In this document: one piece after another, positions 8,656 to 53,568 of the stretch | Numbering within the stretch: position 1 is the stretch's first letter | Layout: each line of letters begins with the position of its first letter | Virus record (IMG/VR): IMGVR_UViG_3300026078_000017 | Location: 248,001-312,000 of that record | Strand: one strand, 5' to 3' | Length of the DNA: 64,000 bases | Notes under the pieces: model-generated | The model's database searches: none | Told to the model about the DNA's origin: nothing | What the model saw: only the letters and a program-made list of their open reading frames with translations | Program-made: the position numbers and the translations under genes

Positions 8656-8727
8656 TGGGCCATCGGGGTAACGATCCCCGTTCGTCGGATTAAAAGTCCG
8701 ATGCTTCACCATTAAAGCTTATAGCCC
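8656..8727 (-). tRNA. tRNA-Lys (UUU)
   Basis: Full cloverleaf GGGCTAT/ATGGCCC; anticodon arm TCGGA-CTTTTAA-TCCGA; atypical T-loop ATCGTTA; no encoded CCA. Confidence 0.9.
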
Positions 8728-9065
8728 TAAATCACCAAAACACCAGCATGAATCTCACCGTGACAATTAGAGCATACCAAAACGCACTTGTCAAGCTCTT
8801 CTTTTACTCGTTTCCACGACAGAGCCCAATTGCCGCTTATTTGAAATTCCTTGGTTGAGGGATCGAGATGATGAAAATGTAATGACTGTTTACATTTACT
8901 ATACCCGCAAACAATACATGAATCACCTTTGTAAGCGAAGCACTGTCGTGCTCTTTCTTTACGCCTGGCGTTGACAAGACAGGTATTACACTGCGTTTTG
9001 GTATGGCCTGCTTTTTTACTATAGCTATATGTGCGAGTGCATTGTGAACATTGATTCATGTTCAC
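8727..9065 (-). CDS. HNH homing endonuclease
   Basis: CxxC pairs, LHFHHLDP..K...KCVLVCSNCHGEIH. Confidence 0.9.
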   Translation of the reverse strand: MNMNQCSQCTRTYSYSKKAGHTKTQCNTCLVNARRKERARQCFAYKGDSCIVCGYSKCKQSLHFHHLDPSTKEFQISGNWALSWKRVKEELDKCVLVCSNCHGEIHAGVLVI

Positions 9066-9075
9066 AATTTAGATG

Positions 9076-9119
9076 AAGGCTAGAGCAATGTCTCACTCTG
9101 CCAACTGAGCTAACGCCTC
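9076..9119 (-). pseudogene. 5' tRNA fragment
   Basis: GAGGCGT-TAGCTCAGTTGGCAGAG acceptor strand and D-arm; no T-arm follows. Confidence 0.5.
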
Positions 9120-9134
9120 GAAAGAAGTTAAGTT

Positions 9135-9240
9135 AAGACACGTGGCAGTTTTGATTACCCAGGTACTGCCAGACCTTTTTGACAAAGTGGCTCACAGGGG
9201 ACACATTCCCACGACAAGTTATGTTGTCGTCCACCCGTCC
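9135..9240 (-). ncRNA. putative structured ncRNA / tRNA-operon leader
   Basis: Downstream of promoter 9245-9272; hairpins ACGACAA/TTGTCGT and TGGCAGT/ACTGCCA. Confidence 0.35.
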
Positions 9241-9260
9241 ATCTACTTTAGCAGAAAGAA

Positions 9261-9320
9261 GTGATGAAGCAAGTAGGAAGGGACGCAGCCTGGTGCTTGC
9301 CAACCTACTCGCCTCATCAC
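9261..9320 (-). ncRNA. putative ~60 nt hairpin RNA
   Basis: 17-bp stem GTGATGAGGCGAGTAGG/CCTACTTGCTTCATCAC just after promoter 9328-9355. Confidence 0.45.
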
Positions 9321-9434
9321 AAAGAACACTTTATCACAAAACCCTAAAGGGTCAAGAGAAAAGATTGGCTGTTTATCCTCCCCGCAGCCAAGGATCACGG
9401 GACACTTTCGTATCAACCGTGAGGAGTCTTTGTG

Positions 9435-9620
9435 TCAGATCGACTCGATGAAAAGCTCGATCTGATTCTGTTGTCCGGGCGTTGCCCCTGGAACTTCTGG
9501 CATCACACGACCATGCGTGTGATGCTCGCATGCTGCCGCAACCCATGCGCGACGTTCTGCGGTGTTCGGAATGAGACTGCGAAGGAAGGTCAGACCGGGG
9601 TGAACCGTTTCGTTTTCCAT
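9435..9620 (-). CDS. hypothetical protein
   Basis: Own promoter at ~9627-9654. Confidence 0.6.
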   Translation of the reverse strand: MENETVHPGLTFLRSLIPNTAERRAWVAAACEHHTHGRVMPEVPGATPGQQNQIELFIESI

Positions 9621-9665
9621 TTGAATATCCTAGCAGGCTGAAGGATTTTGTCAAGAAGATTTGTT

Positions 9666-9790
9666 GTTGTTGGCTTGAACCGGCGCACACAAGGCAAGAC
9701 AAGAGTTTCACGTGTCACTCGCTCCCACGAGTAAAAACGCTAGGCTTCTGTCAGGGGAGATCCCCATATGCGCCCATTCAAACCAACAAC
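9666..9790 (-). ncRNA. putative ~125 nt structured ncRNA
   Basis: ~25-bp closing stem with G-U pairs on minus strand; promoter TTGACA(9825-9820)..TGCTAAAGT. Confidence 0.55.
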
Positions 9791-9976
9791 ACTCTAGACT
9801 TTAGCACCAACTTAGTTTCTGTCAAGACCTTTGTGACCTTACAACCCCGATTTATTCCTCGCACCCAAACACATTAAAGGCATTTGACATATTCGTCTGT
9901 CATAGCCCAACGTGTTGTCGGGACCATACGAGGCAGAATCTCAGGTCACAAAAAGAAGCATAGCAGAGTTTGAGGC

Positions 9977-10393
9977 TTATGCAACGTCTCTTTGAAAATC
10001 TGTCGAGCTTGCCTCAAGCATGCTAGGAATATTCAGGTGGACATTGTGCGGGAATCTGATACCAAGACGACCCGTAACCGGACAAGGGAAGATAATCCCA
10101 GATTGCCACATCACGAGCATTTCTTCAAGAAGTTCTGTCAGAATGGCACTGGACGCTTTTCGCATGCCAAACTTGAGTGGACACCTTGACACAATATCCG
10201 CGATGATCGGGTCAAAGTGCCATTTCGCGACAGTGGGAGAAATCCAGTCGTCAGTTTCGTACTCGACTTCAGTGGACCTGTCGCCTTTCAGTCTCACGAC
10301 AAAATGGACCAAATGACCATAAAGTCGGATACAGGGACGCACAGTAACATCAGACTCACACAGGGATTCAGAGAGAGACAGGAAAGTATTCAT
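9977..10393 (-). CDS. hypothetical protein
   Basis: 138 aa ORF with GGAG RBS. Confidence 0.6.
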   Translation of the reverse strand: MNTFLSLSESLCESDVTVRPCIRLYGHLVHFVVRLKGDRSTEVEYETDDWISPTVAKWHFDPIIADIVSRCPLKFGMRKASSAILTELLEEMLVMWQSGIIFPCPVTGRLGIRFPHNVHLNIPSMLEASSTDFQRDVA

Positions 10394-10540
10394 GTCTCCG
10401 GGCTATGCACTCACCTTGCCAAGTAAACCCCAGGGGAAAACCCTAGTGATTTCGCGGGCTGTTCTAAAATGCCTTGTGGCTCATGCCGTACACGTGGGAC
10501 AAAGGGTGTGCCACGCAGAATTTTGCCCCGTGGGGATAAG

Positions 10541-10566
10541 GAGACGGCACGTTATTGCGCCGTCTC
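10541..10566 (-). terminator. hairpin terminator
   Basis: GAGACGGC...GCCGTCTC. Confidence 0.5.
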
Positions 10567-10603
10567 TATAATGCCTCAGAGGTGACTTCTGTATTCTTAC
10601 ACC

Positions 10604-10822
10604 CTACGACGTAAGCATGTCCGTCAAACGCTTCACAAGCTCTTGCGCTTCCGCAGGAGTGAGCGTAAGAACGTTTGCACGGGGCGCGTGCTCCATGAGA
10701 AGCGTGACGTCGATGGTGTCCGCACGGCGAGAAAAAACAACAGAGTCCTCGCCCATGTCGACTTCCGTGATTTCCGTCTTGCCCGTGTAGTCGTTGACAG
10801 TCGTTCGTACGTGAAAGCTCAT
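10604..10822 (-). CDS. hypothetical protein
   Basis: Own promoter, purine-rich leader, GC-rich codons. Confidence 0.75.
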   Translation of the reverse strand: MSFHVRTTVNDYTGKTEITEVDMGEDSVVFSRRADTIDVTLLMEHAPRANVLTLTPAEAQELVKRLTDMLTS

Positions 10823-10956
10823 ATCGTGGCTCTCTTTCTCAGTTACCTAATAATAGCACCTAACCTGAGGCATGCAAGTACTATTTTGACAAAAGAAAAT
10901 CGGGCACGGAAACCCAAAGGTCTCACATGTCCGATTGCGGCGCCTAGAAGGCTGTG

Positions 10957-11271
10957 TCAGTCATCGAAGTCGGAAAAGCTACCGTAGTCCTCGTCCGTTC
11001 CGAAACCGCAGGAAGCGAGCGCAGACTCCGCATCGCCATCCATGTCCTCACCGTAAAGGTAATCCTCGATTTCCCCTTCGGCCTCGATTTCCTCACGCTC
11101 ACGACGATTCTCTTCCTCATACGCCTCATCGAAGGCAATCTCGATGGACTGCTCGAAATGATGCGTCACGCTATTTGCGGTGGAATCCGCCTCACGCCAG
11201 GCATCGGCGTCAAGCTCAAGTGCCCGAAGATACGTGGAATGGCAGCACTGAATGGTGTGATTCTCGTTCAT
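10957..11271 (-). CDS. highly acidic hypothetical protein
   Basis: D/E-rich, C-terminal MDGDAESALASCGFGTDEDYG; own promoter. Confidence 0.8.
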   Translation of the reverse strand: MNENHTIQCCHSTYLRALELDADAWREADSTANSVTHHFEQSIEIAFDEAYEEENRREREEIEAEGEIEDYLYGEDMDGDAESALASCGFGTDEDYGSFSDFDD

Positions 11272-11359
11272 GGCATATTCTCCGTTGTTGAAGTGCCCTG
11301 CTGACAAAGAACATAATAGCAGAATGGGGTTGTCGTGCAACCCCTATTTTGCCAGATTT

Positions 11360-11599
11360 CTACCGAGCGAGTTTCTTGGCGAATGCCTTACGAGCACGCT
11401 TGTGGGCATCACGATCCGGCTTTGACATTCCGGCTTCCATACGATACCACTCGTGGACACTAAGACACTCGATCGGAACGATGATCTCGCCCCACAAGGG
11501 CGCACACAGTCCACAGTTGTCGATGTTCGGATTCGAGTGTGCCTCACCGGGACACTTGACCGCGTGATACCTGACAGCCTTCGTGGTCGACTTCGTCAT
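11360..11599 (-). CDS. hypothetical Cys/His-containing protein
   Basis: KCPGEAH...NCGLC; own promoter. Confidence 0.75.
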   Translation of the reverse strand: MTKSTTKAVRYHAVKCPGEAHSNPNIDNCGLCAPLWGEIIVPIECLSVHEWYRMEAGMSKPDRDAHKRARKAFAKKLAR

Positions 11600-11655
11600 G
11601 GCGTCCGTCCTTTGTTATGAGGATACTATAGCAAAATAGAAGACACGTGCAAGGA

Positions 11656-11880
11656 TTATTTTTCGGGAAACCACGCCTGAGTGTATCCGCCACAGTCATA
11701 CTCAAAGCTCGACACGCGCTTTCCTTCGTCGAAGCTTGCCAAGATCACACGATCGCCTGAATAAGTCGTCTGTGACAGTTTGCAAGCCTGTAGGTGTGCA
11801 GCTTGACGATCCGTGAAAACCGAAACCGTCGAAAGACCCTCGTAAGGAACATTGACTGCAACCATGTGTGCAAGTGCCAT
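11656..11880 (-). CDS. hypothetical protein
   Basis: Own promoter and RBS. Confidence 0.7.
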   Translation of the reverse strand: MALAHMVAVNVPYEGLSTVSVFTDRQAAHLQACKLSQTTYSGDRVILASFDEGKRVSSFEYDCGGYTQAWFPEK

Positions 11881-11938
11881 TTCGTCATCCGCCTTTCGAT
11901 AGATTCAATATAGCAAAAACCGAGAGTATGTGCAAGAA

Positions 11939-12100
11939 TTATTTTTCCTGCACCCGGAGTTTGTTTAGTGCGGCAAAAAACGCCACTAAGGACTCGGCAA
12001 TACACCGATTGATTGCCTTTGCGTCACCTGGACCAAAGGTGTATCCGCCAGCGGACAAAATCCGCTGTAACTTTCGGTAGTTATTTGGTCGTTTTGTCAC
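11939..12100 (-). CDS. hypothetical protein
   Basis: Hand-translated 53 aa GTG-start ORF after TGCTATTCT box. Confidence 0.45.
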   Translation of the reverse strand: MTKRPNNYRKLQRILSAGGYTFGPGDAKAINRCIAESLVAFFAALNKLRVQEK

Positions 12101-12112
12101 CTTTACAGAATA

Positions 12113-12146
12113 GCAAAACCCACTTGACTTTCAAGTGGGTTTTGCC
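12113..12146 (-). terminator. perfect hairpin terminator
   Basis: GCAAAACCCACTTGA..TCAAGTGGGTTTTGC. Confidence 0.6.
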
Positions 12147-12155
12147 AGAATGTTA

Positions 12156-12365
12156 TCAGTGGATTTCGATGCCCACACCGTAAGGCGTGAACGTTCCGCC
12201 ATCGGCGAGCTTGACGGGCCGAAGAGAAACCTGACCCGTGATCAGGTTCGTGATCTTCGCAGGAAACATGCCACGAAGGTCGGGCTTGTTGTCGAGGATC
12301 TTGACCTCACGGGTCCCACAAGCGAAAAAGAACGACCGACCAATGTTGAAATTGACGATGGACAT
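12156..12365 (-). CDS. hypothetical protein
   Basis: MSIVNFNIG start, own promoter. Confidence 0.7.
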   Translation of the reverse strand: MSIVNFNIGRSFFFACGTREVKILDNKPDLRGMFPAKITNLITGQVSLRPVKLADGGTFTPYGVGIEIH

Positions 12366-12415
12366 TTTCGACACCCTCACTTTCTGAATATAGTCTAGCA
12401 GGGTTTTGGTAAAGG

Positions 12416-12571
12416 TCAATGCAAAACGTTGGACAGAAGGGTAATCACACCCACGAACGCCAGCCAAGCAACCAAAACCCATCCAGCCGTCACGGTTGAG
12501 CCCGTGATCAAGAATGCAGCGAGGGTGAACAGAAACGCGAGAACGAAGGGGAGAGGATTCATGTTCTGCAT
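12416..12571 (-). CDS. small membrane protein
   Basis: Hand-translated 51 aa with two hydrophobic segments; stop lies within TTGACC. Confidence 0.55.
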   Translation of the reverse strand: MQNMNPLPFVLAFLFTLAAFLITGSTVTAGWVLVAWLAFVGVITLLSNVLH

Positions 12572-12595
12572 GATGATTTCTTTCTATGTTGGAGT

Positions 12596-12820
12596 CTAGC
12601 AGGATTCGGGTAAAAGTCGACCCAAATGCAGCAAAGGGTCAAAAAAACCTGAATCGGACATGAGTTGAAAGAAAAAGAACGACTGAGGCGTTTGGGTTCC
12701 AACAAATGTACTTGAACCACGACACCAAATTTCACCAACATATGAATTCCACGTCAGATATTCTTGCTCTGACAAGTCAAACTCATATGCCTCTGACACC
12801 TCAGGAAGTTCGATTCTCAT
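12596..12820 (-). CDS. hypothetical protein
   Basis: Follows promoter TTGCTT..TGCTAAGGT. Confidence 0.6.
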   Translation of the reverse strand: MRIELPEVSEAYEFDLSEQEYLTWNSYVGEIWCRGSSTFVGTQTPQSFFFFQLMSDSGFFDPLLHLGRLLPESC

Positions 12821-12858
12821 CGTAAGAAACCTTAGCACAGGTTTCATTGGAAGCAAGA

Positions 12859-13122
12859 TTACTTCTTCTCACCGTATTTCTTTTCGTAGTTTCGCACGTA
12901 TTCGGTCATGCTAGGACTGAGCAAGTCACAATCAGCCAGAAAGGTCAGACACCCTTCGTACTGTGTCAACTTGTCGCTGTCAAGCGTGCACTTGAATCGT
13001 GCATCCTCATGATTGCCACGGCGCAAGTGTGTCACAGCTTGCCTAAGCACTTCCGTGCCACGACCGTTGTTGACAGTACGATTGTAGGCTTCTACCTTAT
13101 CGGCCAGTTCATCGTTTGTCAT
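12859..13122 (-). CDS. hypothetical protein
   Basis: Follows promoter TTGCAT..TGGTAAGAT. Confidence 0.7.
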   Translation of the reverse strand: MTNDELADKVEAYNRTVNNGRGTEVLRQAVTHLRRGNHEDARFKCTLDSDKLTQYEGCLTFLADCDLLSPSMTEYVRNYEKKYGEKK

Positions 13123-13160
13123 GTGCTTATCTTACCAGGCTTTTGACAGAATGCAAGCCC

Positions 13161-13535
13161 TTACTTCTGAGATTCGTTGTAGGTTTGCCGAAGTAGGTGC
13201 TTTGCGTAATTTACACTACTCCGCAGAGAAGTTACCCACGTTGCACCGCATTTTCCTTCCATCTTGACTATGAATTCATGGTCATCCACGATATCACGAA
13301 GGAGTTGACGCATTGTGTCAAGCTCTTTCTTGAGCTTGACGATTTCGGTTTCTTCCTGTACGACTGGAGCGGTGTATTCCACTTCGGTCATCACGATCGA
13401 CAACCCTGCATCGGACGCCAGCGCCCAGAAACACCGTGCTTCATCCGAGAAAATCCACTGTTGAGCATCGGGCTCGATGAAAAACGAAGCGATCTCACGT
13501 CCAGTGGCAATGTCTTTGACAACGGCGATTTCCAT
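13161..13535 (-). CDS. hypothetical protein with coiled coil
   Basis: MEIAVVKD start, AAGGA RBS, own promoter. Confidence 0.7.
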   Translation of the reverse strand: MEIAVVKDIATGREIASFFIEPDAQQWIFSDEARCFWALASDAGLSIVMTEVEYTAPVVQEETEIVKLKKELDTMRQLLRDIVDDHEFIVKMEGKCGATWVTSLRSSVNYAKHLLRQTYNESQK

Positions 13536-13603
13536 TGTGTCCGTCCTTTGAATATAAAGAAAGCTTATCACGATTTTTCTGTCGTGCAAGCTTTCTTTTT
13601 GTA

Positions 13604-13694
13604 TGGTTGATTTCTGGAATCGAACCAGATCCGTTCCTGCGGTATGCCGGAACATGCTCCCTCTAGGACTTCCGCCCCTTACAACAAATCAACC
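13604..13694 (-). ncRNA. tRNA-like RNA with non-canonical D and anticodon arms
   Basis: Acceptor GGTTGATT/AATCAACC; perfect T-arm TCTGG-TTCGATT-CCAGA; GTTCC/GGAAC arm with 11-nt loop. Confidence 0.6.
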
Positions 13695-13711
13695 GTGACC
13701 CTAGGAACCTC

Positions 13712-13969
13712 TCAGAACGACTTTTCGATCGTCCAACCTGCCGACTTGAGGGTGATCTCGAAAGCCCGCAGAATCGAATTCTGGTGGCGCGTGGTGGTAC
13801 GCGAGCGCGTCTGACCAAAGAACCGAATCGACTTCTTGACACGATCGACGATCGCGATGTTCATGTCGTAGGAGTGAACGTGATCGCCCTTCATCGTCAG
13901 TGCGCCACTGACGCAACCAAGGCCAGTGTTGCAGAAATCGACGAATTCGGAGTCGCGATACTTTGCCAT
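13712..13969 (-). CDS. conserved phage hypothetical protein (SY...S-x-TT-x-H-Q type)
   Basis: HSYDMNIA...SRTTTRHQN; strong AAAGAAAGAGGATA leader. Confidence 0.75.
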   Translation of the reverse strand: MAKYRDSEFVDFCNTGLGCVSGALTMKGDHVHSYDMNIAIVDRVKKSIRFFGQTRSRTTTRHQNSILRAFEITLKSAGWTIEKSF

Positions 13970-14140
13970 TTCGATATCCTCTTTCTTTTCCGTGTCAGTC
14001 AGTGGATAGATATACTTTACCAGAAACCAAGTCAGAGTCAAGAACGATTTTGCTTTTTCTCGTGTTCCTGACGCATGGCAAGGATTTCCGACAGAGATCC
14101 GATTTTGTACTGAATCCCTGGGAAAATGCAAGAACCAAAT

Positions 14141-14335
14141 TCAGCGATTGACCATCGCATTGGCGAATTCCGTACCATCCATGCGGATCTCACGCTTGCA
14201 CGCGAGCCGTGAGACTCGACGCTTCATACGGGAATTCATGACCTTTGCCTGCTTGAGCGTGCCATGACGGCAGCACGAGCACTTGAAGCCACCAGGACCA
14301 CGATTGCACTTCTTGGCGGTGTCTCGGATATCCAT
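14141..14335 (-). CDS. small basic Cys-containing protein
   Basis: GPGGFKCSCC, K/R-rich; own promoter. Confidence 0.7.
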   Translation of the reverse strand: MDIRDTAKKCNRGPGGFKCSCCRHGTLKQAKVMNSRMKRRVSRLACKREIRMDGTEFANAMVNR

Positions 14336-14378
14336 GTTCTCAACCTCTGAATCTATATTAGCAGAATCAGGTAACCCG

Positions 14379-14576
14379 TCAACCGTTCTTTTTGGGATTC
14401 GGCAACCTGAGTACTTGCTTATAACCATCGCACGGACAGTGGGCACACGGACACTTTTCGTTGAAAGTGAAGTGATTACTACGTGGGTGCCCACACTCAC
14501 ACCCAACAATTCCAAGCATTTCCGCTTGTTCTTGGGTGAGATCGACTCGAATCTTTTTGCTCTTTTTCGTAGCCAT
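14379..14576 (-). CDS. small putative zinc-binding protein
   Basis: CECGH...H...CPCAHCPC. Confidence 0.7.
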   Translation of the reverse strand: MATKKSKKIRVDLTQEQAEMLGIVGCECGHPRSNHFTFNEKCPCAHCPCDGYKQVLRLPNPKKNG

Positions 14577-14578
14577 GG

Positions 14579-14974
14579 TCAATTCCCCACATGACCGCAA
14601 AAGGTCACGTCGTCATGGTTCGGTTGACACACAGCATAGCAGCGTCCAGCGGGGTCAAACTGACTCGAAAAGTCACAAACTCCATCGCTGGTGTCGCCAA
14701 AAAGACACGACTCGCACGCAACGAAGTGATTGATTTCGATATCTTCCATGCAGAAGTGTGCAGCATTGACCGGCGAAGCGTAGGTAAGACCCACACAAGC
14801 CTGCTCACACGTACGACCATTCGACGGATAACCGGCAATGTGGCAGTCGGTCTGCATGCGCTGACAGTCCGACACGCAAGCTTCCATGGCAGTCTCGTCC
14901 GTGTAGGTCATCGCCACCGGCGCGCTACAACCAACAACCGTCGCGAGCATCACGAGCGAAAATAGAGTCTTCAT
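14579..14974 (-). CDS. Cys-rich lipoprotein
   Basis: Signal peptide with VVG-C lipobox, many Cys; own promoter. Confidence 0.75.
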   Translation of the reverse strand: MKTLFSLVMLATVVGCSAPVAMTYTDETAMEACVSDCQRMQTDCHIAGYPSNGRTCEQACVGLTYASPVNAAHFCMEDIEINHFVACESCLFGDTSDGVCDFSSQFDPAGRCYAVCQPNHDDVTFCGHVGN

Positions 14975-15034
14975 ATTGGCATCACTCACTTTCTGAGTAT
15001 ATCTTAGCGGAAAATCTCGATCTGTCAAACTGAT

Positions 15035-15442: not shown

Positions 15443-15495
15443 GTCGCTAACCTCAGAAGACAATATAGCAGGGTGAAGGGATCGTGCAAGGGATT

Positions 15496-15639
15496 TTAGG
15501 TAGAAAGCTTCTCTTTGTACTTTTCCAGGGCTTGCAGGAATGCCGACCCGTATCCATGACGAGCGCAAGCGCTCGAAAAGTCTCGCCCCTGGATTTCGTT
15601 GGTTGTGCCATCGAACCAAAACAGGATGAAAGTGCGCAT
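15496..15639 (-). CDS. hypothetical protein
   Basis: MRTFILFWFDG, own promoter. Confidence 0.65.
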   Translation of the reverse strand: MRTFILFWFDGTTNEIQGRDFSSACARHGYGSAFLQALEKYKEKLST

Positions 15640-29759: not shown

Positions 29760-29987
29760 TCACTCGGGCAAAAGAAAACTCCACATGCTCTGATATCCCT
29801 CAGACTCAAATGCAGAGCTGTGTGTATCACACAGACTATTTAGATGCCAAGTCTTGTAGTGATGAAAATAGGGTCGTGAACTTTCATACTTCAAGATCAA
29901 TTCATATGGTTTATCACCATAGAAAAGTAAAGTCCCTGGTGGCAATGGCGACTTAGGAAAAACGTGAGATGGCTTTTTCACGGCCAT
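29760..29987 (-). CDS. small SH3/KOW-like protein (GD family)
   Basis: LPPGTLL...ELILKY. Confidence 0.65.
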   Translation of the reverse strand: MAVKKPSHVFPKSPLPPGTLLFYGDKPYELILKYESSRPYFHHYKTWHLNSLCDTHSSAFESEGYQSMWSFLLPE

Positions 29988-30382
29988 TCGGGGAGGGTAG
30001 GGTCCTCCTGGAAGGAAGCACGCATCTGTGCAACCTTGTCGTCAGGAACACCATGCGTGTTCTGAAATTGAGTCTTGAGACACTTCTGGAAAACCGTGTA
30101 ACCTGCCTTCTTGGCAAGGTCAACGTATTCCTTGTAGTGTTTGCGGATCAGGTTCGTGTTGTCCACGACGATCAGGTCATCACCACGAGCAAGAGCCTGC
30201 TCGAAAGCATAACGACACGACCCATGTGCCTTGCCCAAGAGAGCAGAATCGAACTGGTAGGTTCCTGAGCGTTCGAAATACAGGTCAGCGGAACACACGG
30301 TAGCCTGAGGAACGTGCGTCTTGATCCAGGTGGATTTACCCGAGCCACTCGCCGCACGCATGAGAATAACTTGCTTAGTCAT
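29978..30382 (-). CDS. P-loop kinase (AAA_33 / polynucleotide kinase-like)
   Basis: Walker A AASGSGKST, CSADLYF, VVDNTN, HGVP. Confidence 0.85.
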   Translation of the reverse strand: MTKQVILMRAASGSGKSTWIKTHVPQATVCSADLYFERSGTYQFDSALLGKAHGSCRYAFEQALARGDDLIVVDNTNLIRKHYKEYVDLAKKAGYTVFQKCLKTQFQNTHGVPDDKVAQMRASFQEDPTLPEWP

Positions 30383-30599
30383 CTGGTTATTGTACCTTGC
30401 TTTCTATGATTGTCAAGGTATAGTTACTCCTATGGCAACGATCGGTTCACAACCGAAATCTCAGAGCTTTTATTAGCGACCAAGAGATTGCTCTCAAGCT
30501 TGTCAGTGCTGGTGAAGCAACGCCTGAGCAGGTTTTCTTGGCTTTGAAGGCTGCCAAGGTACTTGACGGCGAAAGTCCTTAGTGATATAGTCACTCGTT

Positions 30600-33111: not shown

Positions 33112-33444
33112 TTATTCTTCAACCCGAGTCATCTGCGTGCCGAAGAGATAGGTTGGCACATAAACCTTCTTTTGTAGACGCAAACAAAACATCAAGCAAA
33201 ACTCACGCCCAAACTTGAACTTTCTGTTATCCACATACAACAGAAAGTCACCCTTCAAAATCGCTGAGTCATAACTGTTGATGTTGATGACACCTTCCAC
33301 ATATTTCATGTAGTATTCGTCTTTGAGACCAAATCTTGAGCTGTTGATTTCTCCAATCACATGGAACATTTCTCCATACTTCGGATATTCTTCCACGGGC
33401 ATGCTTTGAAGAGCCAATTTCCTTAGCTGGTACTTGGTTGCCAT
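33112..33444 (-). CDS. small SH3-like protein (GD family, divergent)
   Basis: PKYGEMF...KGDFLLYVD. Confidence 0.65.
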   Translation of the reverse strand: MATKYQLRKLALQSMPVEEYPKYGEMFHVIGEINSSRFGLKDEYYMKYVEGVININSYDSAILKGDFLLYVDNRKFKFGREFCLMFCLRLQKKVYVPTYLFGTQMTRVEE

Positions 33445-33472
33445 GTCGGTCTGGACATGATATCATACAAGA

Positions 33473-33811
33473 ATGACCAAGACAACCTCGTGGAATCTTT
33501 TTCTTGATGATCTTCGAATTCCACCTGAAATGCATCAACCTTCTCTTGAAAATCCGGCTTTTTGGACCCTTGCGCAGTCCTCACAAGAAGCTATGGATCT
33601 GGTTCGGGAAAAGGGCATGCCAGCATTTATGAGTCTTGATCATGACCTCGGAGGTGATGATAAGTCTATGGTCTTCCTAAATTGGCTGGCTTATGAGTAC
33701 TGGAATGGAGAAGACAACATTCCGCTTTATGTAGTTCACAGTGCAAATCCCGTAGGTGCCGAGAACATTGAGTCATTTATGTTGTCTTGGGTTAGGAGCA
33801 TGGAATTGTGA
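33473..33811 (+). CDS. cyclic-phosphate-processing receiver domain protein (cREC-like)
   Basis: LFLDDLR-x-P, SLDHDLG, VHSANPVG. Confidence 0.8.
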   Translation: MTKTTSWNLFLDDLRIPPEMHQPSLENPAFWTLAQSSQEAMDLVREKGMPAFMSLDHDLGGDDKSMVFLNWLAYEYWNGEDNIPLYVVHSANPVGAENIESFMLSWVRSMEL

Positions 33812-36888: not shown

Positions 36889-36973
36889 ACTCCTGGATCC
36901 AGCGGGTAAGGAACCGTCCTCTTAAACGACAGTGGGTGATAACCCAATGCAGGTTCGAATCCTGCCAGGAGTC
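36889..36973 (+). tRNA. type II (long variable arm) tRNA, probably Leu-derived, aberrant anticodon arm
   Basis: ACTCCTG/CAGGAGT acceptor; GCAGG-TTCGAAT-CCTGC; variable arm TGGGT/ACCCA; anticodon loop CTCTTAAAC ambiguous. Confidence 0.7.
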
Positions 36974-50566: not shown

Positions 50567-50782
50567 GTTCTTCTCCTGGGATTTTTAACCAGGTTGCACT
50601 AAAATCTAAAGGGTGATAGTCTTAGGTATCATGGAAACTCTACTGGTTGTCTCTGGCTGGTCTTGCCTCGTGACTGGTTTCTTTCTGTTTGTGCCGCTCA
50701 TGATCCTTGGATCCAAGGCAGGTTACAGTATCGGTGCAGCCATTGGTGGAAGTCTTGGAAGATTTTTTAGGTCCTTTGTTGA

Positions 50783-51142
50783 ATGACTAAATCACCCTTT
50801 GCTAAGGTTCAGGCAGGAGACATGATCCAGACAACAAAGTTTGGGGCATGGACTTTTTTGAAGAGAAACGACTACAGGAAGAATTCCCGAGATTGGAATC
50901 ACTGTGAAGGGTGGTTTTTGGTTATTGAAACAAGAACCTGGAAAATCAGTGACGAGCATCCTTGGATTTTAACCTTAGATCTTTGGTCACCCAAGGAAAA
51001 TTACTGGTGTGACATTAGAGTGTACTTATATCAAGAAGATATTCCAAAGGATGTTGAAAGTCAATTGGAGATGGTTGAAGTTAATGAACTCAACAACCCA
51101 AAATTGCTGACACATATACCTTGTGTCTCTGAGACAAAATAA
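50783..51142 (+). CDS. small SH3/KOW-like protein (GD family)
   Basis: VQAGDMI...WFLVIE. Confidence 0.7.
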   Translation: MTKSPFAKVQAGDMIQTTKFGAWTFLKRNDYRKNSRDWNHCEGWFLVIETRTWKISDEHPWILTLDLWSPKENYWCDIRVYLYQEDIPKDVESQLEMVEVNELNNPKLLTHIPCVSETK

Positions 51143-51153
51143 AGGAAAACAAA

Positions 51154-51546
51154 ATGAACGTTATTCAAGTAGTTATGGGCGATTGGTCACAGGATGGTCA
51201 CAACCACACAGAAACTGTGGTCATTATGAGCGACCACACCGCAAAGCAAATGGAAAAGGCATATAAGGCAGGTGTCAAAAAGTGCAAGTTTGACATTTCT
51301 TCATTCTGTGAGGAATATGAAGACAACACCATTTCCAATAAAATGTTTCTTTATTTTTTCAATTGGGGTGTGGAGATGGAAGAAAACTACGACGAAGATG
51401 CCGACCATCAGCCAATTGGTTATTCTGACTTTGCCAACATTTACTTGAAGACGTGCGAAATTGGAGATCCGACATTTAAGTACGTGAGAGTTGACTCCAA
51501 TGCTTCTTCGGTCAATATTGGCGGATATGGGTTGTTTTCGAATTGA
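51154..51546 (+). CDS. conserved phage hypothetical protein
   Basis: GDWSQDGH...CEEYED...IGGYGLF. Confidence 0.8.
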   Translation: MNVIQVVMGDWSQDGHNHTETVVIMSDHTAKQMEKAYKAGVKKCKFDISSFCEEYEDNTISNKMFLYFFNWGVEMEENYDEDADHQPIGYSDFANIYLKTCEIGDPTFKYVRVDSNASSVNIGGYGLFSN

Positions 51547-51625
51547 AAGTAAATTTGATACAACGCCAAACCAATCTAGATACTACTGCTTAGAGCATCC
51601 ACATTTGCTCTAGAAAGTAGTTAAA

Positions 51626-51781
51626 GTGAGAAAATACGAATACAAAATCGAGTCTTTTACAAGTAATATGTACCAGCCTACATATCTGGAAAATCATCTC
51701 AATAAACTTGGAGAAGACGGTTGGAAACTGATCGATAAAGACAAAGAGGTTATCATCCTCAGGCGTCGTAAACAGGCTTAA
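51626..51781 (+). CDS. DUF4177-like small protein
   Basis: Hand-translated KYEYK...LNKLGEDGWKLI...LRR. Confidence 0.65.
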   Translation: MRKYEYKIESFTSNMYQPTYLENHLNKLGEDGWKLIDKDKEVIILRRRKQA

Positions 51782-51791
51782 TTAACTTGAC

Positions 51792-52442
51792 ATGTTTTGG
51801 ATTTACGCGCTTCTTGATGAAAAAGGTTTTCCTAGATATGTTGGAAAAACCTATGACTTGAAAGAACGACTGAGAAATCATCTCAAAGAGAAAGGTCGTT
51901 GTCATCGAATCTGTTGGCTTAAATCTATGAAATCTAAGGGACTCAATCCCACATTGATTGCATTGGATTCTAAGCCAACAGAGCAAGAAGCTTTGGATGA
52001 AGAAGTTTTTTTGATATCTTATTTTCGTTATTTGGGTGCTGATTTAACCAACGGAACAGATGGTGGTGAAGGAATCTCTGGACACAAACATTCCTTAGAA
52101 ACAAGAAACAAAATGTCCAAAAGTCGGATAGGACATATAACTTCACCTGAAACTCGACGTAAGTTGTCTGAATCAAACAAAGGTAAACCACATAAAGGTG
52201 GATGGCATCATAATGAAACAAGTAAGAAAAAAATAACAGGTAGAAAACCAAGGCAAATTCAAGACTCGCATGGAAAAGTCTTTGCGTCTGTTCGTGAAGC
52301 TGCTAAAGTGTTTGGTGTAAGCATCGATCAAATCAAATATGCCCTTCAAAAGGGCACTCCCACCCACAAAGTACCAAGGTTACATTATGTTGAAGGTTCA
52401 AGAATATCTACTGACGCACACATTGAACGATTTAGCTCGTGA
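51792..52442 (+). CDS. GIY-YIG homing endonuclease with NUMOD3 repeats
   Basis: WIYAL...RYVGKT...R; LTNGTDGGEG; HSLETRNKMS / SPETRRKLS. Confidence 0.9.
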   Translation: MFWIYALLDEKGFPRYVGKTYDLKERLRNHLKEKGRCHRICWLKSMKSKGLNPTLIALDSKPTEQEALDEEVFLISYFRYLGADLTNGTDGGEGISGHKHSLETRNKMSKSRIGHITSPETRRKLSESNKGKPHKGGWHHNETSKKKITGRKPRQIQDSHGKVFASVREAAKVFGVSIDQIKYALQKGTPTHKVPRLHYVEGSRISTDAHIERFSS

Positions 52443-53568
52443 ACATGGCGTCTATTCTCGCTTCAGCACGAAAAATCCTTTGAAGTGGTCTCTAAATTAC
52501 GACCAGATCGAAGCGAAGGATGCAGATCCGATCGCTCAGGAGTGTCGTGGTCTGGTTCTTGCGACGGAAGAGCCGTTGGCAGACATGGATCCGACGCTTG
52601 GCGCAATGGGCGTTACGGTTGGCGAGACGAAGATTCGTGGTCTTCCCATGGGACGGTTTTTCAACTACGGCCAGGGCTCTGCCGCTACGGTTGACCTGGA
52701 TTCGCCTGACACGCGCTTCTGTGAGAAGCTCGACGGAACCCTGTGCATCATGTATTGGGATCGTCACCTTGGAGAGTGGTCCATTGCCACGCGATCTGTT
52801 CCAGACGCTGACCTTCCTATGGATGGTTTTGGCAATCAGACGTTCACGGATCTCTTCTGGAAGGCTTTTAAGGCTTCTGGTGGAATGATTTCGCAGTTGG
52901 ACTATGCACGTGGGTGGCATACCTTCTGTTTCGAGCTTTGCACGCCCGATAACCAGATTGTGGTCAAGTACCCGGACTACAAGGTTTATCTCCTGGCTGC
53001 TCGTGAGAACGAGACCGGAATCAACATGGATCCTCAGCCTTGGGCGGTCCAGATGTCGGTGGAGTGTGCTCCGACGTATCGTTTCGGCTCCACGGACGAA
53101 ATGCTGAATTTCGTTTCCTCGCGAAATCCCTTGGCTCACGAGGGAATCGTCGTTGTTGACAAGGACTTCAATCGAGTCAAGGTCAAGAATGCGGGATATC
53201 TCGCTTACAACAAGATCAAGGACTCTGTTGCAAAGTCTCCTCGTGCGGTAATGGAGATCGTTCTTCTTGGCAAGGAAGACGACGTTATGCCGCTCGTTCC
53301 CGAGCATGTGCAGAAGGTCATCCTTGACACCAAGGATCGCCTGGCGGCATTTTTGCGAGTCACGGACGAGGAATACACGGCTTGCTATCACACGGACCGT
53401 AAGACGTTTGCTCTTGCCATTCAGGCGGGTTCTGGTAACATGGGACCACAGATGGCACGATGGTCGGGAAAGTGTGCTTCTACCAAGGACTGGATCTTCT
53501 CTCAGCGGAAGGATGGAAATTGGTCAGATGGGTTCCTTGACTCGCTTATGCGTATGTGTAAGGAATAA
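52387..53568 (+). CDS. T4 Rnl1-like RNA ligase
   Basis: RFFNY, EKLDGT (motif I), FEL..P.NQIVV.Y, EGIVV (IV), RVKVK (V). Confidence 0.9.
   Translation: MLKVQEYLLTHTLNDLAREHGVYSRFSTKNPLKWSLNYDQIEAKDADPIAQECRGLVLATEEPLADMDPTLGAMGVTVGETKIRGLPMGRFFNYGQGSAATVDLDSPDTRFCEKLDGTLCIMYWDRHLGEWSIATRSVPDADLPMDGFGNQTFTDLFWKAFKASGGMISQLDYARGWHTFCFELCTPDNQIVVKYPDYKVYLLAARENETGINMDPQPWAVQMSVECAPTYRFGSTDEMLNFVSSRNPLAHEGIVVVDKDFNRVKVKNAGYLAYNKIKDSVAKSPRAVMEIVLLGKEDDVMPLVPEHVQKVILDTKDRLAAFLRVTDEEYTACYHTDRKTFALAIQAGSGNMGPQMARWSGKCASTKDWIFSQRKDGNWSDGFLDSLMRMCKE

What the first reader, a model, noticed from the sequence alone, without database searches (positions are those of the whole stretch)
8656..53568. Dispersed RNA-repair and tRNA-protection toolkit
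Seen: Rnl1-like ligase (52387), stand-alone P-loop kinase (29978), cyclic-phosphate-processing receiver (33473), tRNA-Lys(UUU), several tRNA mimics, KH and S4-like proteins. Known: T4 Rnl1 with Pnkp repairs PrrC-cleaved tRNA-Lys(UUU), needing 5' kinase, 2',3'-cyclic phosphate removal and ligation. Inference: the three activities are split over unlinked small genes, with the receiver-like protein as the 3' end-healing enzyme and tRNA mimics as decoys.
Basis: partly seen in the sequence, partly recalled or inferred. Interest (0 to 1): 0.68.

Follow-up and report, generated by a model that had tools for sequence, protein, structure and literature searches.

The report
Split tRNA-repair genes in jumbo phage
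A 320-kb soil phage carries an RNA ligase, a small kinase, a receiver-like enzyme and a lysine tRNA that together look like a scattered version of the known phage kit for mending tRNAs cut by bacterial defences; the idea is already in the literature and still untested.

Summary
The four core features are real and lie at the stated coordinates: tRNA-Lys(UUU) at 8656-8727(-), an AAA_33 P-loop kinase at 29978-30382(-), a cREC_REC protein at 33473-33811(+), and an Rnl1-family RNA ligase at 52387-53568(+). No KH or S4 protein was found. "Several tRNA mimics" reduces to two sub-threshold tRNA-like elements and one 5' tRNA fragment.

The window comes from a 320-kb metagenomic jumbo phage. The RNA-repair reading is well supported by gene context. 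Relatives of this kinase sit next to Rnl1 plus a calcineurin-like phosphoesterase in many phages, or are fused to both. In one phage (L127) a ligase, a kinase and a cREC gene are contiguous, with cREC in the phosphoesterase's place. The kinase and cREC form a conserved divergent pair in four related jumbo phages. In the window each follows a sigma70-like promoter that ends 6 nt before its ATG.

The hypothesis is not new. Iyer, Aravind and co-workers (2021, 2022) named cREC and predicted this role. The kinase lacks the acceptor arginine and lid arginines of proven polynucleotide kinases. No phosphomonoesterase is detectable. No activity has been tested. Verdict: a new member of a known, predicted kind, of moderate interest.

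The parts
8656..8727 (-). tRNA-Lys, anticodon UUU, 72 nt. No CCA is encoded. The T-loop reads AUCGUUA, so the usual T54-A58 pair is swapped to A54-U58.
   Evidence: ARAGORN. Rfam RF00005 at 49.9 bits, E 1.1e-7. Sequence read.
8727..9065 (-). HNH homing endonuclease gene (112 aa). It ends where the tRNA-Lys begins.
   Evidence: phrog_2255 at E 2.4e-26 and four further HNH PHROGs. Sequence read.
9075..9112 (-). Orphan 5' tRNA-half-like stretch (acceptor strand, D-arm and start of the anticodon arm), just upstream of the HNH gene. Probably the remnant of a disrupted tRNA gene.
   Evidence: Exact TAGCTCAGTTGG D-loop motif. Sequence read. No matching 3' acceptor strand nearby. No significant fold (z -0.27).
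13604..13693 (-). tRNA-like four-way fold: a 9-12 bp acceptor-like stem and a canonical T-arm (UCUGG UUCGAUU CCAGA). It overlaps the predicted start of ORF 13161-13655(-). No tRNA tool calls it.
   Evidence: Exact GGTTCGATTCC match. MFE -32.2 kcal/mol, z -2.39, with 3 of 200 shuffles folding as well. No Rfam hit at E<=5.
29978..30382 (-). Stand-alone Pnk-like P-loop kinase (134 aa), the proposed 5'-OH end-healing enzyme. It has the P-loop G13-S-G-K16-S-T18, the general-base Asp33, Thr76 and an invariant His110 in the motif N-x-H-G-V-P. It has no D-x-x-R arginine (Phe36 instead) and no lid RxxxR.
   Evidence: AAA_33 at E 7.4e-12. phrog_2071 at 1.6e-27, phrog_505 (polynucleotide kinase) at 3.9e-8, and the kinase end of phrog_8238 at 2.3e-7. 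CthPnk kinase 4GP7 at E 7e-5. TIGR04075 bacterial Pnkp at 8.4e-8. AF2 model with pLDDT 90. Foldseek top hit T4 Pnk 1LY1 at E 2.3e-6, TM 0.72. Family alignment.
30389..30416 (-). Sigma70-like promoter TTGACA-16-TACAAT (11 of 12). It ends 6 nt before the kinase ATG, which implies a leaderless or near-leaderless transcript.
33438..33466 (+). Sigma70-like promoter TTGCCA-17-(TG)TATCAT (10 of 12). It ends 6 nt before the cREC ATG.
   Evidence: The same geometry precedes the cREC genes of relatives L007 and L010.
33473..33811 (+). cREC (cyclic-phosphate-processing receiver) protein of 112 aa, the first gene of the rightward gene array. It is the proposed 2',3'-cyclic phosphate / 3' end-healing enzyme. 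Residues invariant across the family: D12, D13, D56-H57-D58, H89-S90, N92, N98, W106.
   Evidence: PF20274 at E 5.3e-20, 72.3 bits. phrog_1479 at 4.4e-21. 607 homologues found. Alignment A4. AF2 model with pLDDT 90.1. All top structural matches are CheY-like receivers: Foldseek E 1e-3 to 6e-2 and VIA Z 7.3-9.3.
36889..36973 (+). Sub-threshold tRNA-like element. It has type II shape (long variable arm), a perfect acceptor stem and T-arm, and a 9-nt anticodon loop CUCUUAAAC that resembles tRNA-Leu(UAA) with 2 extra nt. Probably a decayed or variant tRNA-Leu copy.
   Evidence: Rfam tRNA at 26.5 bits against a gathering score of 29. Not called by ARAGORN. Fold z -1.89. Aligned with the phage's own tRNA-Leu(UAA).
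51792..52442 (+). GIY-YIG/NUMOD3 homing endonuclease gene (216 aa). Its 3' end overlaps the ligase start.
   Evidence: Pfam marks on the called gene (GIY-YIG weak, NUMOD3 faint). GIY-YIG and NUMOD3 hits within alignment A2.
52387..53568 (+). Rnl1-family ATP-dependent RNA ligase (393 aa), the proposed sealing enzyme. Motif I is C-E-K-L-D-G, motif III F-E, motif IV E-G-I-V, motif V K-V-K. The match runs on into the T4 Rnl1 C-terminal domain, up to T4 residue 328.
   Evidence: phrog_562 at E 1.8e-39. TIGR02308 at E 3.7e-18, below the equivalog cut-off. T4 Rnl1 2C5U, 5TT6 and 9DO4 at E about 1e-10, with alignment shown. 912 phage records hold relatives, all below 60% identity.

Best explanation
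The window is part of the accessory-gene region of a 320-kb jumbo phage. It encodes a heal-and-seal tRNA repair pathway split into three separate small genes, together with a replacement tRNA-Lys(UUU).

Proposed mechanism. [quoted passage not shown] The Pnk-like kinase phosphorylates the 5'-OH. The cREC protein opens, and possibly removes, the cyclic phosphate. The Rnl1-type ligase then seals the break. The phage's own tRNA-Lys(UUU) supplies a substitute for the tRNA most often attacked.

The kinase and cREC each follow a host-type promoter placed 6 nt before the start codon. This suggests, but does not show, that both are made early by host RNA polymerase.

Shown here: the family assignments, the folds, the intact ligase motifs, the gene-neighbourhood and fusion evidence, and the promoter geometry. 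Inferred: every enzymatic activity, the substrate, and the timing of expression.
For: Ligase. The Rnl1 family match is strong and all nucleotidyl-transferase motifs are kept.

Kinase. The closest solved sequence is the CthPnk kinase domain. The closest folds are T4 Pnk, mammalian PNKP, PSTK and CthPnk.

Context of the kinase clade. Members are translationally coupled to Rnl1 plus a calcineurin-like phosphoesterase in Aeromonas phage 2L372X, Vibrio phage F88 and E. coli phage ESCO9, and lie next to Rnl1 in uncultured phage LR756511. Of 80 IMG/VR loci holding relatives of the kinase, 27 have an Rnl1-type ligase within 10 kb. In 7 of those the kinase and ligase share one ORF; the one scanned, L135, reads kinase-Metallophos-Rnl1. 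Ten loci have the metallophosphoesterase and 5 have cREC.

cREC. L127 carries contiguous genes for an RNA ligase, a kinase and cREC with no metallophosphoesterase, so cREC sits in the phosphoesterase position. The divergent kinase/cREC pair, 1.9-5 kb apart, is conserved in four related jumbo-phage contigs. All three genes recur on two further viral contigs. cREC has a receiver fold with invariant acidic and histidine residues at the strand ends where receivers do phosphoryl chemistry.

tRNA. tRNA-Lys(UUU) also occurs in loci L010 and L126.

Literature. cREC was predicted to process 2',3'-cyclic ends and was found linked to T4-like ligase and nucleotide-kinase genes (PMC7824862; PMC9503650). 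A phage tRNA-Lys neutralises the PARIS defence system, which degrades tRNA (PMC11464382, title and abstract).
Against: No activity of any of the three proteins, nor of any cREC protein, has been measured. PMC9503650 states that cREC is experimentally uncharacterised.

The kinase has Phe36 where CthPnk Arg41 and T4 Arg38 lie. That arginine is essential and anchors the acceptor strand. The kinase also has His110 in place of the lid arginines, so its phosphate acceptor could be something else.

Opening a cyclic phosphate leaves a monoester that Rnl1-type sealing cannot use at the 3' position. No HAD, metallophosphoesterase, 2H, Tpt1/KptA or sirtuin is detectable in the window.

Only 6 of 80 cREC loci have an Rnl1 within 10 kb. 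Other cREC genes lie with NAMPT, an Acb1-like 2H enzyme and PIN-PhoH, or with RecA/gp32/helicase modules.

The ligase lies 18.6 kb from cREC and has no promoter of its own.

The host and its defence systems are unknown.
Confidence: 0.6

Rival explanations
1. The ligase and kinase do repair RNA, but cREC is not the RNA 3' end-healing enzyme. Instead it degrades small phosphodiester or cyclic-phosphate molecules of the NAD/ADP-ribose world or of nucleotide-based immune signalling, such as ADP-ribose 1''-2'' cyclic phosphate, cADPR-type signals or 2',3'-cyclic nucleotides. Under this reading 3' healing is done by an unrecognised protein or by a gene elsewhere in the 320-kb genome.
For: In BF/CBB/GAP32-type jumbo phages cREC is fused to Nudix (annotations; PMC9503650). 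There it lies beside NAMPT, an Acb1-like 2H phosphoesterase and PIN-PhoH. Only 6 of 80 cREC loci have an Rnl1 within 10 kb. Two Nudix genes and an NAD-kinase-like gene lie 2-6 kb beyond the right end of the window. The 2021 and 2022 papers give both roles as possible.
Against: In this phage clade cREC is paired with the Pnk-like kinase, not with Nudix or NAD genes. L127 has a contiguous ligase-kinase-cREC cassette with no other phosphoesterase. Five of 80 kinase loci carry cREC within 4 kb.
Confidence: 0.25
2. The four features are functionally unrelated accessory genes that happen to lie in one 45-kb stretch of a gene-dense jumbo phage. Under this reading the kinase phosphorylates a nucleotide or metabolite, the ligase has another RNA or tail-fibre role as T4 gp63 does, and the tRNA-Lys simply supplements codon usage.
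For: The genes are dispersed over three locations, and the ligase has no obvious shared regulation with the others. The kinase lacks the residues that bind the polynucleotide acceptor in proven Pnks. AAA makes up 33% of the phage's Lys codons, so some translational demand exists. The window holds about 185 small genes, so picking a few by theme is easy.
Against: Relatives of this kinase have an Rnl1-type ligase within 10 kb in 27 of 80 loci and are fused to it in 7. cREC lies near the kinase in 5 of 80 kinase loci, although only 119 of 50,697 phage records hold a cREC match. The kinase/cREC pairing is conserved across four diverged jumbo phages.
Confidence: 0.12
3. The tRNA-like elements are functional decoys that soak up host anticodon nucleases.
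For: Two elements keep an exact T-arm and an acceptor stem while their anticodon arms are aberrant. The element at 36889 has a 9-nt loop that still shows the UAA anticodon context. A related phage has a 1.2-kb non-coding stretch with similar tRNA-like pieces.
Against: Neither element reaches tRNA thresholds. Fold z-scores are modest (-1.9 and -2.4). One element overlaps a predicted coding start. The sequences are not conserved in relatives beyond a 15-nt T-arm match. A homing endonuclease sits next to a tRNA fragment, which fits ordinary decay of tRNA genes. No expression data exist.
Confidence: 0.05

Closest known systems
Bacteriophage T4 Pnkp + Rnl1 tRNA-Lys repair pathway (counter to the PrrC anticodon nuclease)
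   Same: It uses an Rnl1-family sealing ligase with the same catalytic motifs and a kinase with the T4 Pnk fold. The target logic is the same: tRNA-Lys(UUU).
   Different: T4 joins the kinase to a HAD-type (DxDxT) 3' phosphatase in one protein. Here the kinase stands alone, lacks the acceptor arginine (T4 Arg38) and the lid arginines, and no HAD domain is present. T4's eight tRNA genes include no tRNA-Lys (stated from general knowledge, not tested here), whereas this phage carries one.
Three-gene cassette of metallophosphoesterase, Rnl1 and small kinase in phi92-like (ESCO9), Aeromonas (2L372X) and Vibrio (F88) phages, and the single-chain kinase-Metallophos-Rnl1 fusion (phrog_8238, L135)
   Same: The kinase belongs to the same clade: the H-x-V-P motif is shared and D-x-x-R is absent. 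The ligase is of the same Rnl1 type.
   Different: In those phages the genes overlap or are fused, and the 3' enzyme is a calcineurin-like phosphoesterase. In the window the genes are 3-22 kb apart, no metallophosphoesterase exists, and cREC is the only candidate phosphoesterase.
cREC-containing RNA-repair / NAD-ADPr systems predicted by Iyer, Anantharaman, Krishnan, Burroughs and Aravind (PMC7824862, 2021; PMC9503650, 2022), e.g. the phage V5 / Mydo neighbourhood of sirtuin, T4-like ligase, cREC, nucleotide kinase and MazG
   Same: The trio of families is the same (T4-like ligase, cREC, nucleotide kinase), as is the proposed role for cREC.
   Different: No sirtuin, MazG, Nudix, 2H or calcineurin partner is detectable in the window. 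The genes are dispersed rather than operonic. The stable unit in this clade is a divergent kinase/cREC pair.
Bacterial Pnkp-Hen1 RNA repair system (Clostridium thermocellum Pnkp)
   Same: The kinase's closest solved sequence relative is the CthPnk kinase domain. The P-loop, the Asp general base and the Thr are shared.
   Different: There is no Hen1 methyltransferase, no fused phosphatase or ligase, and Arg41, Arg120 and Arg123 are not conserved. A SpoU-type methylase lies just outside the window, but a link to it is speculative.
Phage-encoded tRNAs that bypass tRNA-cleaving defences (T5 tRNA-Lys against PARIS/AriB; mycobacteriophage tRNAs with altered anticodon loops)
   Same: A lone phage tRNA-Lys(UUU) in an accessory region fits the replacement strategy (PMC11464382 and PMC10264068, abstracts).
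   Different: Resistance of this tRNA to any nuclease is untested and the host tRNA is unknown. The only unusual feature seen is the swapped A54-U58 T-loop pair.

Membership tests
Rnl1 (T4 RnlA) RNA ligase family | Motif I lysine nucleophile in KxDG | tested here: met
   C-E-K-L-D-G aligns with T4 T-K99-E-D-G.
Rnl1 (T4 RnlA) RNA ligase family | Motifs III (FE), IV (EGxV) and V (KxK) | tested here: met
   FELCTP aligns with FEFVAP, HEGIVVV with IEGYVAV, and RVKVKN with HFKIKS.
Rnl1 (T4 RnlA) RNA ligase family | Profile score at the curated family threshold | tested here: not met
   TIGR02308 scores 65.8 bits against an equivalog cut-off of 242. PF09511 gave no hit at E<=0.01. phrog_562 matches at E 1.8e-39. 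A 39%-identical relative in L009 does carry PF09511. The protein is therefore a divergent member of the superfamily branch, not an equivalog.
Rnl1 (T4 RnlA) RNA ligase family | C-terminal all-helical domain that confers tRNA specificity | tested here: inconclusive
   The alignment runs to T4 residue 328 of 374 with low identity. No structure was predicted for the ligase.
Polynucleotide 5'-kinase (T4 Pnk / CthPnk type) | P-loop GxxxxGK(S/T) with the catalytic Lys and Ser | tested here: met
   S12-G-S-G-K16-S17-T18. G13, G15 and K16 are invariant in both family alignments, and T18 is invariant or nearly so.
Polynucleotide 5'-kinase (T4 Pnk / CthPnk type) | Aspartate general base (CthPnk Asp38, T4 Asp35) | tested here: met
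   Asp33 aligns with Asp38 and is invariant in the family.
Polynucleotide 5'-kinase (T4 Pnk / CthPnk type) | Essential arginine three residues after the Asp, which anchors the acceptor's first phosphodiester (CthPnk Arg41, T4 Arg38) | tested here: not met
   Phe36 is at that position. The column is F/Y/W/M/H across the family. Essentiality is taken from PMC3902929.
Polynucleotide 5'-kinase (T4 Pnk / CthPnk type) | Lid arginines that contact the NTP gamma phosphate (CthPnk Arg120/Arg123) | tested here: not met
   The lid region reads F-Q-N-T-H110-G-V-P. His110 is invariant, and an arginine before the Asn is present in only some members.
Polynucleotide 5'-kinase (T4 Pnk / CthPnk type) | Pnk-type P-loop kinase fold | tested here: met
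   Foldseek top hits are 1LY1 (T4 Pnk, E 2.3e-6, TM 0.72), 1YJ5 (PNKP), 3ADB (PSTK) and 4JT2 (CthPnk).
Polynucleotide 5'-kinase (T4 Pnk / CthPnk type) | Phosphorylation of 5'-OH RNA or DNA ends | not testable with these tools
   This needs a biochemical assay.
cREC_REC (PF20274) | Profile score above Pfam's gathering threshold | tested here: met
   72.3 bits against a cut-off of 27, E 5.3e-20.
cREC_REC (PF20274) | Receiver (CheY-like) fold with conserved aspartates after strand 1 and strand 3 | tested here: met
   The model has pLDDT 90.1, with strands at 8-11, 32-34, 52-55 and 85-88. D12/D13 follow strand 1, D56-H57-D58 follow strand 3 and H89-S90 follow strand 4, and all are invariant. All 50 top VIA matches are receivers, Z 7.3-9.3.
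cREC_REC (PF20274) | Never associated with histidine kinases; found in RNA-repair or NAD/ADPr contexts | tested here: met
   No histidine-kinase domain appears among the 176 window proteins. The neighbours seen in relatives are kinase, ligase, metallophosphoesterase, NAMPT and 2H genes.
cREC_REC (PF20274) | Hydrolysis of 2',3'-cyclic or 1''-2''-cyclic phosphates | not testable with these tools
   The activity is predicted only, and the papers read here report no experiment.
tRNA (RF00005) | Score at or above the gathering threshold and a call by ARAGORN | tested here: met
   This holds for 8656-8727 only. The element at 36889-36973 scores 26.5 against 29 and is not called. The element at 13604-13693 is not detected.
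   No such match among 176 predicted proteins at E<=0.1. In one search only the first 25 of 28 families were listed.

The most novel reading that the evidence does not exclude
In this clade of soil jumbo phages the bifunctional Pnkp has been replaced by two unrelated-looking small proteins that are kept as a divergent gene pair. One is a Pnk-fold kinase that has swapped the canonical acceptor and lid arginines for an invariant histidine motif. The other is a four-stranded receiver-like enzyme (cREC) that on its own converts a 2',3'-cyclic phosphate end to a ligatable 3'-OH. It would do so through an aspartyl-phosphate intermediate, in the way the HAD domain of T4 Pnkp does. If so, cREC is a complete 3' end-healing phosphoesterase and a non-orthologous replacement for the metallophosphoesterase and HAD modules.
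Probability: 0.25. Interest if true: 0.6.

Novelty: new member of a known kind. Interest (0 to 1): 0.38.

Why it matters
Cutting tRNAs is now recognised as a common bacterial anti-phage tactic; PrrC, RloC, PARIS, retron effectors and Schlafen-type nucleases all do it. The only phage repair pathway proven biochemically is T4 Pnkp plus Rnl1.

This locus, together with the L127 cassette and the conserved kinase/cREC pair found here, offers a clean minimal set of three small proteins. That set could test two open predictions. The first is that cREC is a phosphoesterase acting on RNA ends. The second is that the arginine-less, Rnl1-linked kinase clade is a true polynucleotide kinase.

A positive result would give the first biochemical function for a domain reported in up to 18% of jumbo phages (PMC9503650). 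A negative result would redirect cREC toward degradation of NAD/ADP-ribose-derived or nucleotide signals. The locus itself is not a new kind of system.

Tried and rejected
Near-identity DNA search of 51000-56000 against 50,697 phage records gave no match, so no annotated close relative exists.

Pfam and PHROGs scans of all 176 predicted proteins looked for KH, S4, sirtuin, Nudix, MazG, 2H, HAD, Macro, metallophosphoesterase and RtcB. None was found.

tblastn of the cassette metallophosphoesterases and of an HD protein from phages 2L372X and F88 against the window found nothing credible.

Regex motif scans for HAD DxDxT, calcineurin-like, sirtuin and RtcB motifs gave no hits. The 2H-type HxT/S pairs that matched are non-specific.

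I searched for the missing 3' half of the tRNA fragment at 9075-9112 and for a group I intron around the HNH gene. There is no complementary acceptor strand nearby and no intron family in Rfam.

The T-arm consensus with one mismatch is not enriched over shuffled sequence (6 found, 5.9 expected). Only the two exact matches were followed up. The candidate at 25615-25740 did not fold better than shuffles (z +0.54) and was dropped.

A sequence search of solved structures with cREC found nothing at E<=10.

Complex prediction on kinase plus cREC returned no verdict (score 0.01, controls not run). This is no evidence either way, and I make no claim that the two proteins bind.

I considered codon compensation as the reason for the tRNAs. 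AAA is 33% of Lys codons and UUA is 3% of Leu codons. Without knowing the host this cannot be decided.

The sroH and mir-7558 Rfam hits at E 0.2-5 were dismissed as chance.

The rest of the 320-kb genome was not scanned beyond 10 kb on either side of the window.

Full report
**Source and setting**

The window matches record positions 135,061-199,060 of JGI metagenome contig Ga0068856_100000003. That contig is 320,456 bp and is also held as IMGVR_UViG_3300026078_000017 (320,479 bp). It is a jumbo phage with no close annotated relative: megablast against 50,697 phage records found nothing.

The window holds about 185 small genes at a G+C content of about 0.45. It is almost entirely unannotatable. 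Pfam at E<=1e-3 recognises only AAA_33, cREC_REC, GIY-YIG (in two proteins), NUMOD3, DUF7227, GP88 and Radical_SAM among 176 predicted proteins. PHROGs adds homing endonucleases and families of unknown function.

**Checking the observation**

The four core features are real.
- tRNA-Lys(UUU) lies at 8656-8727(-). It is the only tRNA in the window that ARAGORN calls and that reaches Rfam's gathering score.
- The ligase at 52387-53568(+) gives the 393-aa product on record in public collections. It matches phrog_562, the T4 gp63 family, at E 1.8e-39. It also matches TIGR02308 at E 3.7e-18, below the equivalog cut-off, and T4 Rnl1 structures at E about 1e-10. It keeps the motif I lysine (KxDG) and motifs III, IV and V.
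- The 134-aa protein at 29978-30382(-) is an AAA_33 P-loop kinase.
- The 112-aa protein at 33473-33811(+) matches Pfam PF20274, "Cyclic-phosphate processing Receiver domain", at 72 bits.

The other claims fare worse.
- No KH or S4 domain appears even at E<=0.1.
- "Several tRNA mimics" comes down to three items:
  - a sub-threshold tRNA-like element at 36889-36973(+), scoring 26.5 bits against a gathering score of 29; it has a long variable arm, and its 9-nt loop CUCUUAAAC aligns with the anticodon loop of the phage's own tRNA-Leu(UAA), which lies outside the window;
  - a cloverleaf-like element at about 13604-13693(-) with an exact T-arm and a fold z-score of -2.4;
  - an orphan 5' tRNA fragment at about 9075-9112(-), directly upstream of an HNH homing endonuclease gene that abuts the tRNA-Lys.
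- Two exact GGTTCRAWTCC matches in 128 kb of both strands compare with about 0.1 expected for random sequence (my own arithmetic). The elements are therefore probably tRNA-derived. Nothing indicates that they act as decoys; decay of tRNA genes is the simpler reading.

**The kinase**

By sequence, its nearest solved relative is the kinase domain of Clostridium thermocellum Pnkp, 4GP7, at E 7e-5. An AlphaFold2 model with pLDDT 90 is closest to T4 polynucleotide kinase 1LY1 (E 2.3e-6, TM 0.72). Mammalian PNKP, O-phosphoseryl-tRNA kinase and CthPnk follow.

The family alignment keeps the P-loop, the general-base Asp33 and Thr76. It differs from proven polynucleotide kinases in two ways. The arginine three residues after the Asp is a hydrophobic or aromatic residue here (Phe36); that arginine is essential in CthPnk (Arg41) and T4 Pnk (Arg38) (PMC3902929). 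The lid arginines are replaced by an invariant His110 in the motif N-x-H-G-V-P. I therefore file the protein as Pnk-like in fold, not as a proven member of the Pnk family.

Gene context argues strongly for an RNA-repair role.
- In Aeromonas phage 2L372X, Vibrio phage F88 and E. coli phage ESCO9, members of the same clade are the last gene of an overlapping three-gene cassette of calcineurin-like phosphoesterase, Rnl1 and kinase.
- In the 595-kb uncultured phage LR756511 the kinase lies 270 bp upstream of the ligase.
- Of 80 IMG/VR loci around relatives of the kinase, 27 have an Rnl1-type ligase within 10 kb.
- In 7 of those 27 the kinase and the ligase are one polypeptide. L135, the one scanned with Pfam, reads AAA_33 + Metallophos + RNA_lig_T4_1.

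**cREC**

The family is large, with 607 homologues at E<=1e-3, most of them stand-alone proteins of about 100 aa. The invariant residues are D12, D13, D56-H57-D58, H89-S90, N92, N98 and W106.

The model has pLDDT 90.1 and shows a four-stranded alpha/beta domain. The acidic residues sit at the C-terminal ends of strands 1, 3 and 4. An exhaustive structural comparison returns only CheY-like receiver domains among the top 50 matches, at Z 7.3-9.3 and rmsd about 3 A over about 92 residues. Foldseek agrees, though weakly. No solved structure is related by sequence.

Iyer et al. named the domain, noted that it is never found with histidine kinases, and proposed that it opens 2',3'-cyclic phosphates of RNA or 1''-2''-cyclic ADP-ribose phosphate. 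They reported operonic links to RNA ligases and, in V5/Mydo-type phages, to a T4-like ligase, a nucleotide kinase, a sirtuin and MazG (PMC7824862; PMC9503650). They state that it is experimentally uncharacterised, and a further literature search found nothing newer.

My own neighbourhood survey gives a mixed picture.
- Among the 80 best cREC loci in IMG/VR, only 6 have an Rnl1 within 10 kb, 5 have the kinase and 3 have the metallophosphoesterase.
- Eleven related loci place cREC in a RecA/gp32/helicase module.
- The BF/CBB/GAP32-type jumbo phages place it with NAMPT, an Acb1-like 2H phosphoesterase and PIN-PhoH.
- Seen from the kinase side, cREC lies within 4 kb of the kinase in 5 of 80 loci, although only 119 of 50,697 phage records hold a cREC match.

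The most telling case is L127. There an RNA ligase (PF09414 with an OB domain, 8979-9992), an AAA_33 kinase (9995-10456) and cREC (10470-10862) are contiguous. A PF09511 Rnl1 lies 5 kb upstream, and there is no metallophosphoesterase. cREC thus sits where the phosphoesterase sits in the common cassette.

**Arrangement in this phage clade**

The kinase and cREC are not unlinked. In the window they lie 3.1 kb apart on opposite strands, and cREC is the first gene of the rightward array. The same divergent arrangement, 1.9-5 kb apart, recurs in three related jumbo-phage contigs, where the kinase or cREC used to find each contig is 53-60% identical to its window counterpart.

All three genes co-occur on two further viral contigs:
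- IMGVR_UViG_3300042453_005404: kinase at 106.6 kb, ligase at 114.4 kb, cREC at 126.3 kb;
- IMGVR_UViG_3300027924_001428.

In L009 a kinase (45% identity) and a PF09511 ligase (39% identity) lie 5.6 kb apart.

**Regulation**

Of 19 strong sigma70-like promoter matches (at least 10 of 12 positions) in the window, 9 end 2-9 nt before a predicted start codon, and 6 of them end exactly 6 nt before it. Two of these precede the kinase (TTGACA-16-TACAAT) and cREC (TTGCCA-17-TATCAT). The same geometry precedes cREC in L007 and L010, and precedes both the kinase and the ligase in L009.

The window's ligase has no such promoter. Its start is overlapped by a GIY-YIG homing endonuclease gene. The pattern suggests leaderless transcripts made by host RNA polymerase. 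Early timing is an inference from that.

**What is missing**

A cyclic phosphodiesterase would leave a phosphomonoester. I found no HAD, calcineurin-like, 2H, Tpt1/KptA, sirtuin or Macro protein in the window.

The 10 kb beyond the right end of the window holds two Nudix genes, a SpoU-type RNA methylase, an RNase T-like exonuclease, an NAD-kinase-like gene, a sigma-factor gene and tRNA-Leu(UAA). The remaining 236 kb or so of the genome was not examined.

Three possibilities follow. cREC may complete the 3' healing by itself; receiver chemistry through an aspartyl-phosphate would allow this, as in the HAD domain of T4 Pnkp, but that is my inference. A partner may lie elsewhere in the genome. 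Or cREC may serve a small-molecule role instead.

**Conclusion**

The best-supported reading (about 0.6) is a split heal-and-seal RNA repair set (kinase, cREC, Rnl1) plus a replacement tRNA-Lys(UUU), directed against tRNA-cleaving host defences. The main rival (about 0.25) keeps the ligase and kinase in repair but assigns cREC to ADP-ribose-derived or cyclic-nucleotide substrates. A coincidental grouping (about 0.12) is unlikely given the fusion and neighbourhood evidence. The decoy idea has little support.

The system is a new member of a kind already predicted in the literature. Its value is as a compact test case for the untested cREC activity and for the arginine-less kinase clade.

Noticed in passing
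Window-wide; e.g. 30389-30416(-), 33438-33466(+), 26950(-), 9654(-), 5821(-), 3835(-), 28897(-), 25582(-), 30563-30591(+): Nine of the 19 strongest sigma70-like promoter matches end 2-9 nt before a predicted start codon, six of them exactly 6 nt before it. This points to a set of leaderless (or nearly leaderless) transcription units read by host RNA polymerase. The same geometry appears in relatives L007, L009 and L010.
   Followed up: partly
8727-9112(-): An HNH homing endonuclease gene sits between a 5' tRNA fragment and the intact tRNA-Lys, and its stop codon abuts the tRNA's first base. This looks like endonuclease invasion of a former tRNA cluster.
   Followed up: partly
8656-8727(-): The tRNA-Lys has the T-loop AUCGUUA. 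The universal T54-A58 reverse-Hoogsteen pair is swapped to A54-U58, and no CCA end is encoded.
   Followed up: no
51792-52442(+), plus a second GIY-YIG hit somewhere among ORFs 32476-63730: A free-standing GIY-YIG/NUMOD3 homing endonuclease gene overlaps the start of the ligase gene. Pfam and PHROGs report a second GIY-YIG endonuclease in the right half of the window, whose position I did not determine.
   Followed up: no
45135-45839(+) and 46629-47513(+): A DUF7227/GP88 protein lies near a radical SAM enzyme whose weak best matches are MoaA and viperin-like enzymes (NCBIfam E about 1e-6 to 3e-4; PDB 1TV7 and 6B4C). DUF7227 keeps its position about 9-12 kb downstream of cREC in a 304-kb relative.
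   Followed up: partly
Outside the window: L092 931-8518 (record 199,984-207,571): The 10 kb beyond the right end of the window carries tRNA-Leu(UAA), an RNase T-like exonuclease, two Nudix hydrolases, a SpoU-type RNA 2'-O-methylase, an NAD-kinase-like protein and a sigma70 region-2 protein. The Nudix and NAD genes bear on the alternative (ADP-ribose) role of cREC. A 2'-O-methylase could protect RNA from transesterifying nucleases.
   Followed up: no
L127 3708-10862: One viral contig holds a PF09511 Rnl1, a methyltransferase and a GmrSD_N-like protein, followed by contiguous genes for a PF09414 RNA ligase (with OB domain), an AAA_33 kinase, cREC, an APS-kinase-like P-loop protein and DHFR. It has two ligases and no metallophosphoesterase.
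   Followed up: partly
L135 9938-12421 (also L136, L139, L141, L154, L155, L167): These loci encode single polypeptides of about 720-870 aa in which a kinase and an Rnl1-type ligase are fused. L135, the one scanned, reads AAA_33 kinase + calcineurin-like phosphoesterase + RNA_lig_T4_1. This is a phage Pnkp-like fusion that uses an Rnl1-type ligase domain (phrog_8238).
   Followed up: partly
L007 16735-17932: A related 326-kb phage has a 1.2-kb gene-free stretch with several tRNA-like pieces. One is an 80-nt 'tRNA-Arg(GCG)' called only by ARAGORN. Another is a T-arm identical over 15 nt to that of the window element at 36889.
   Followed up: no
8600-15700: This stretch has higher G+C (0.48-0.51) and unusually long gaps between predicted genes (130-600 bp). 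It contains the tRNA, the tRNA fragment and the tRNA-like element at 13.6 kb. It may hold other non-coding RNAs that no tool recognised.
   Followed up: no
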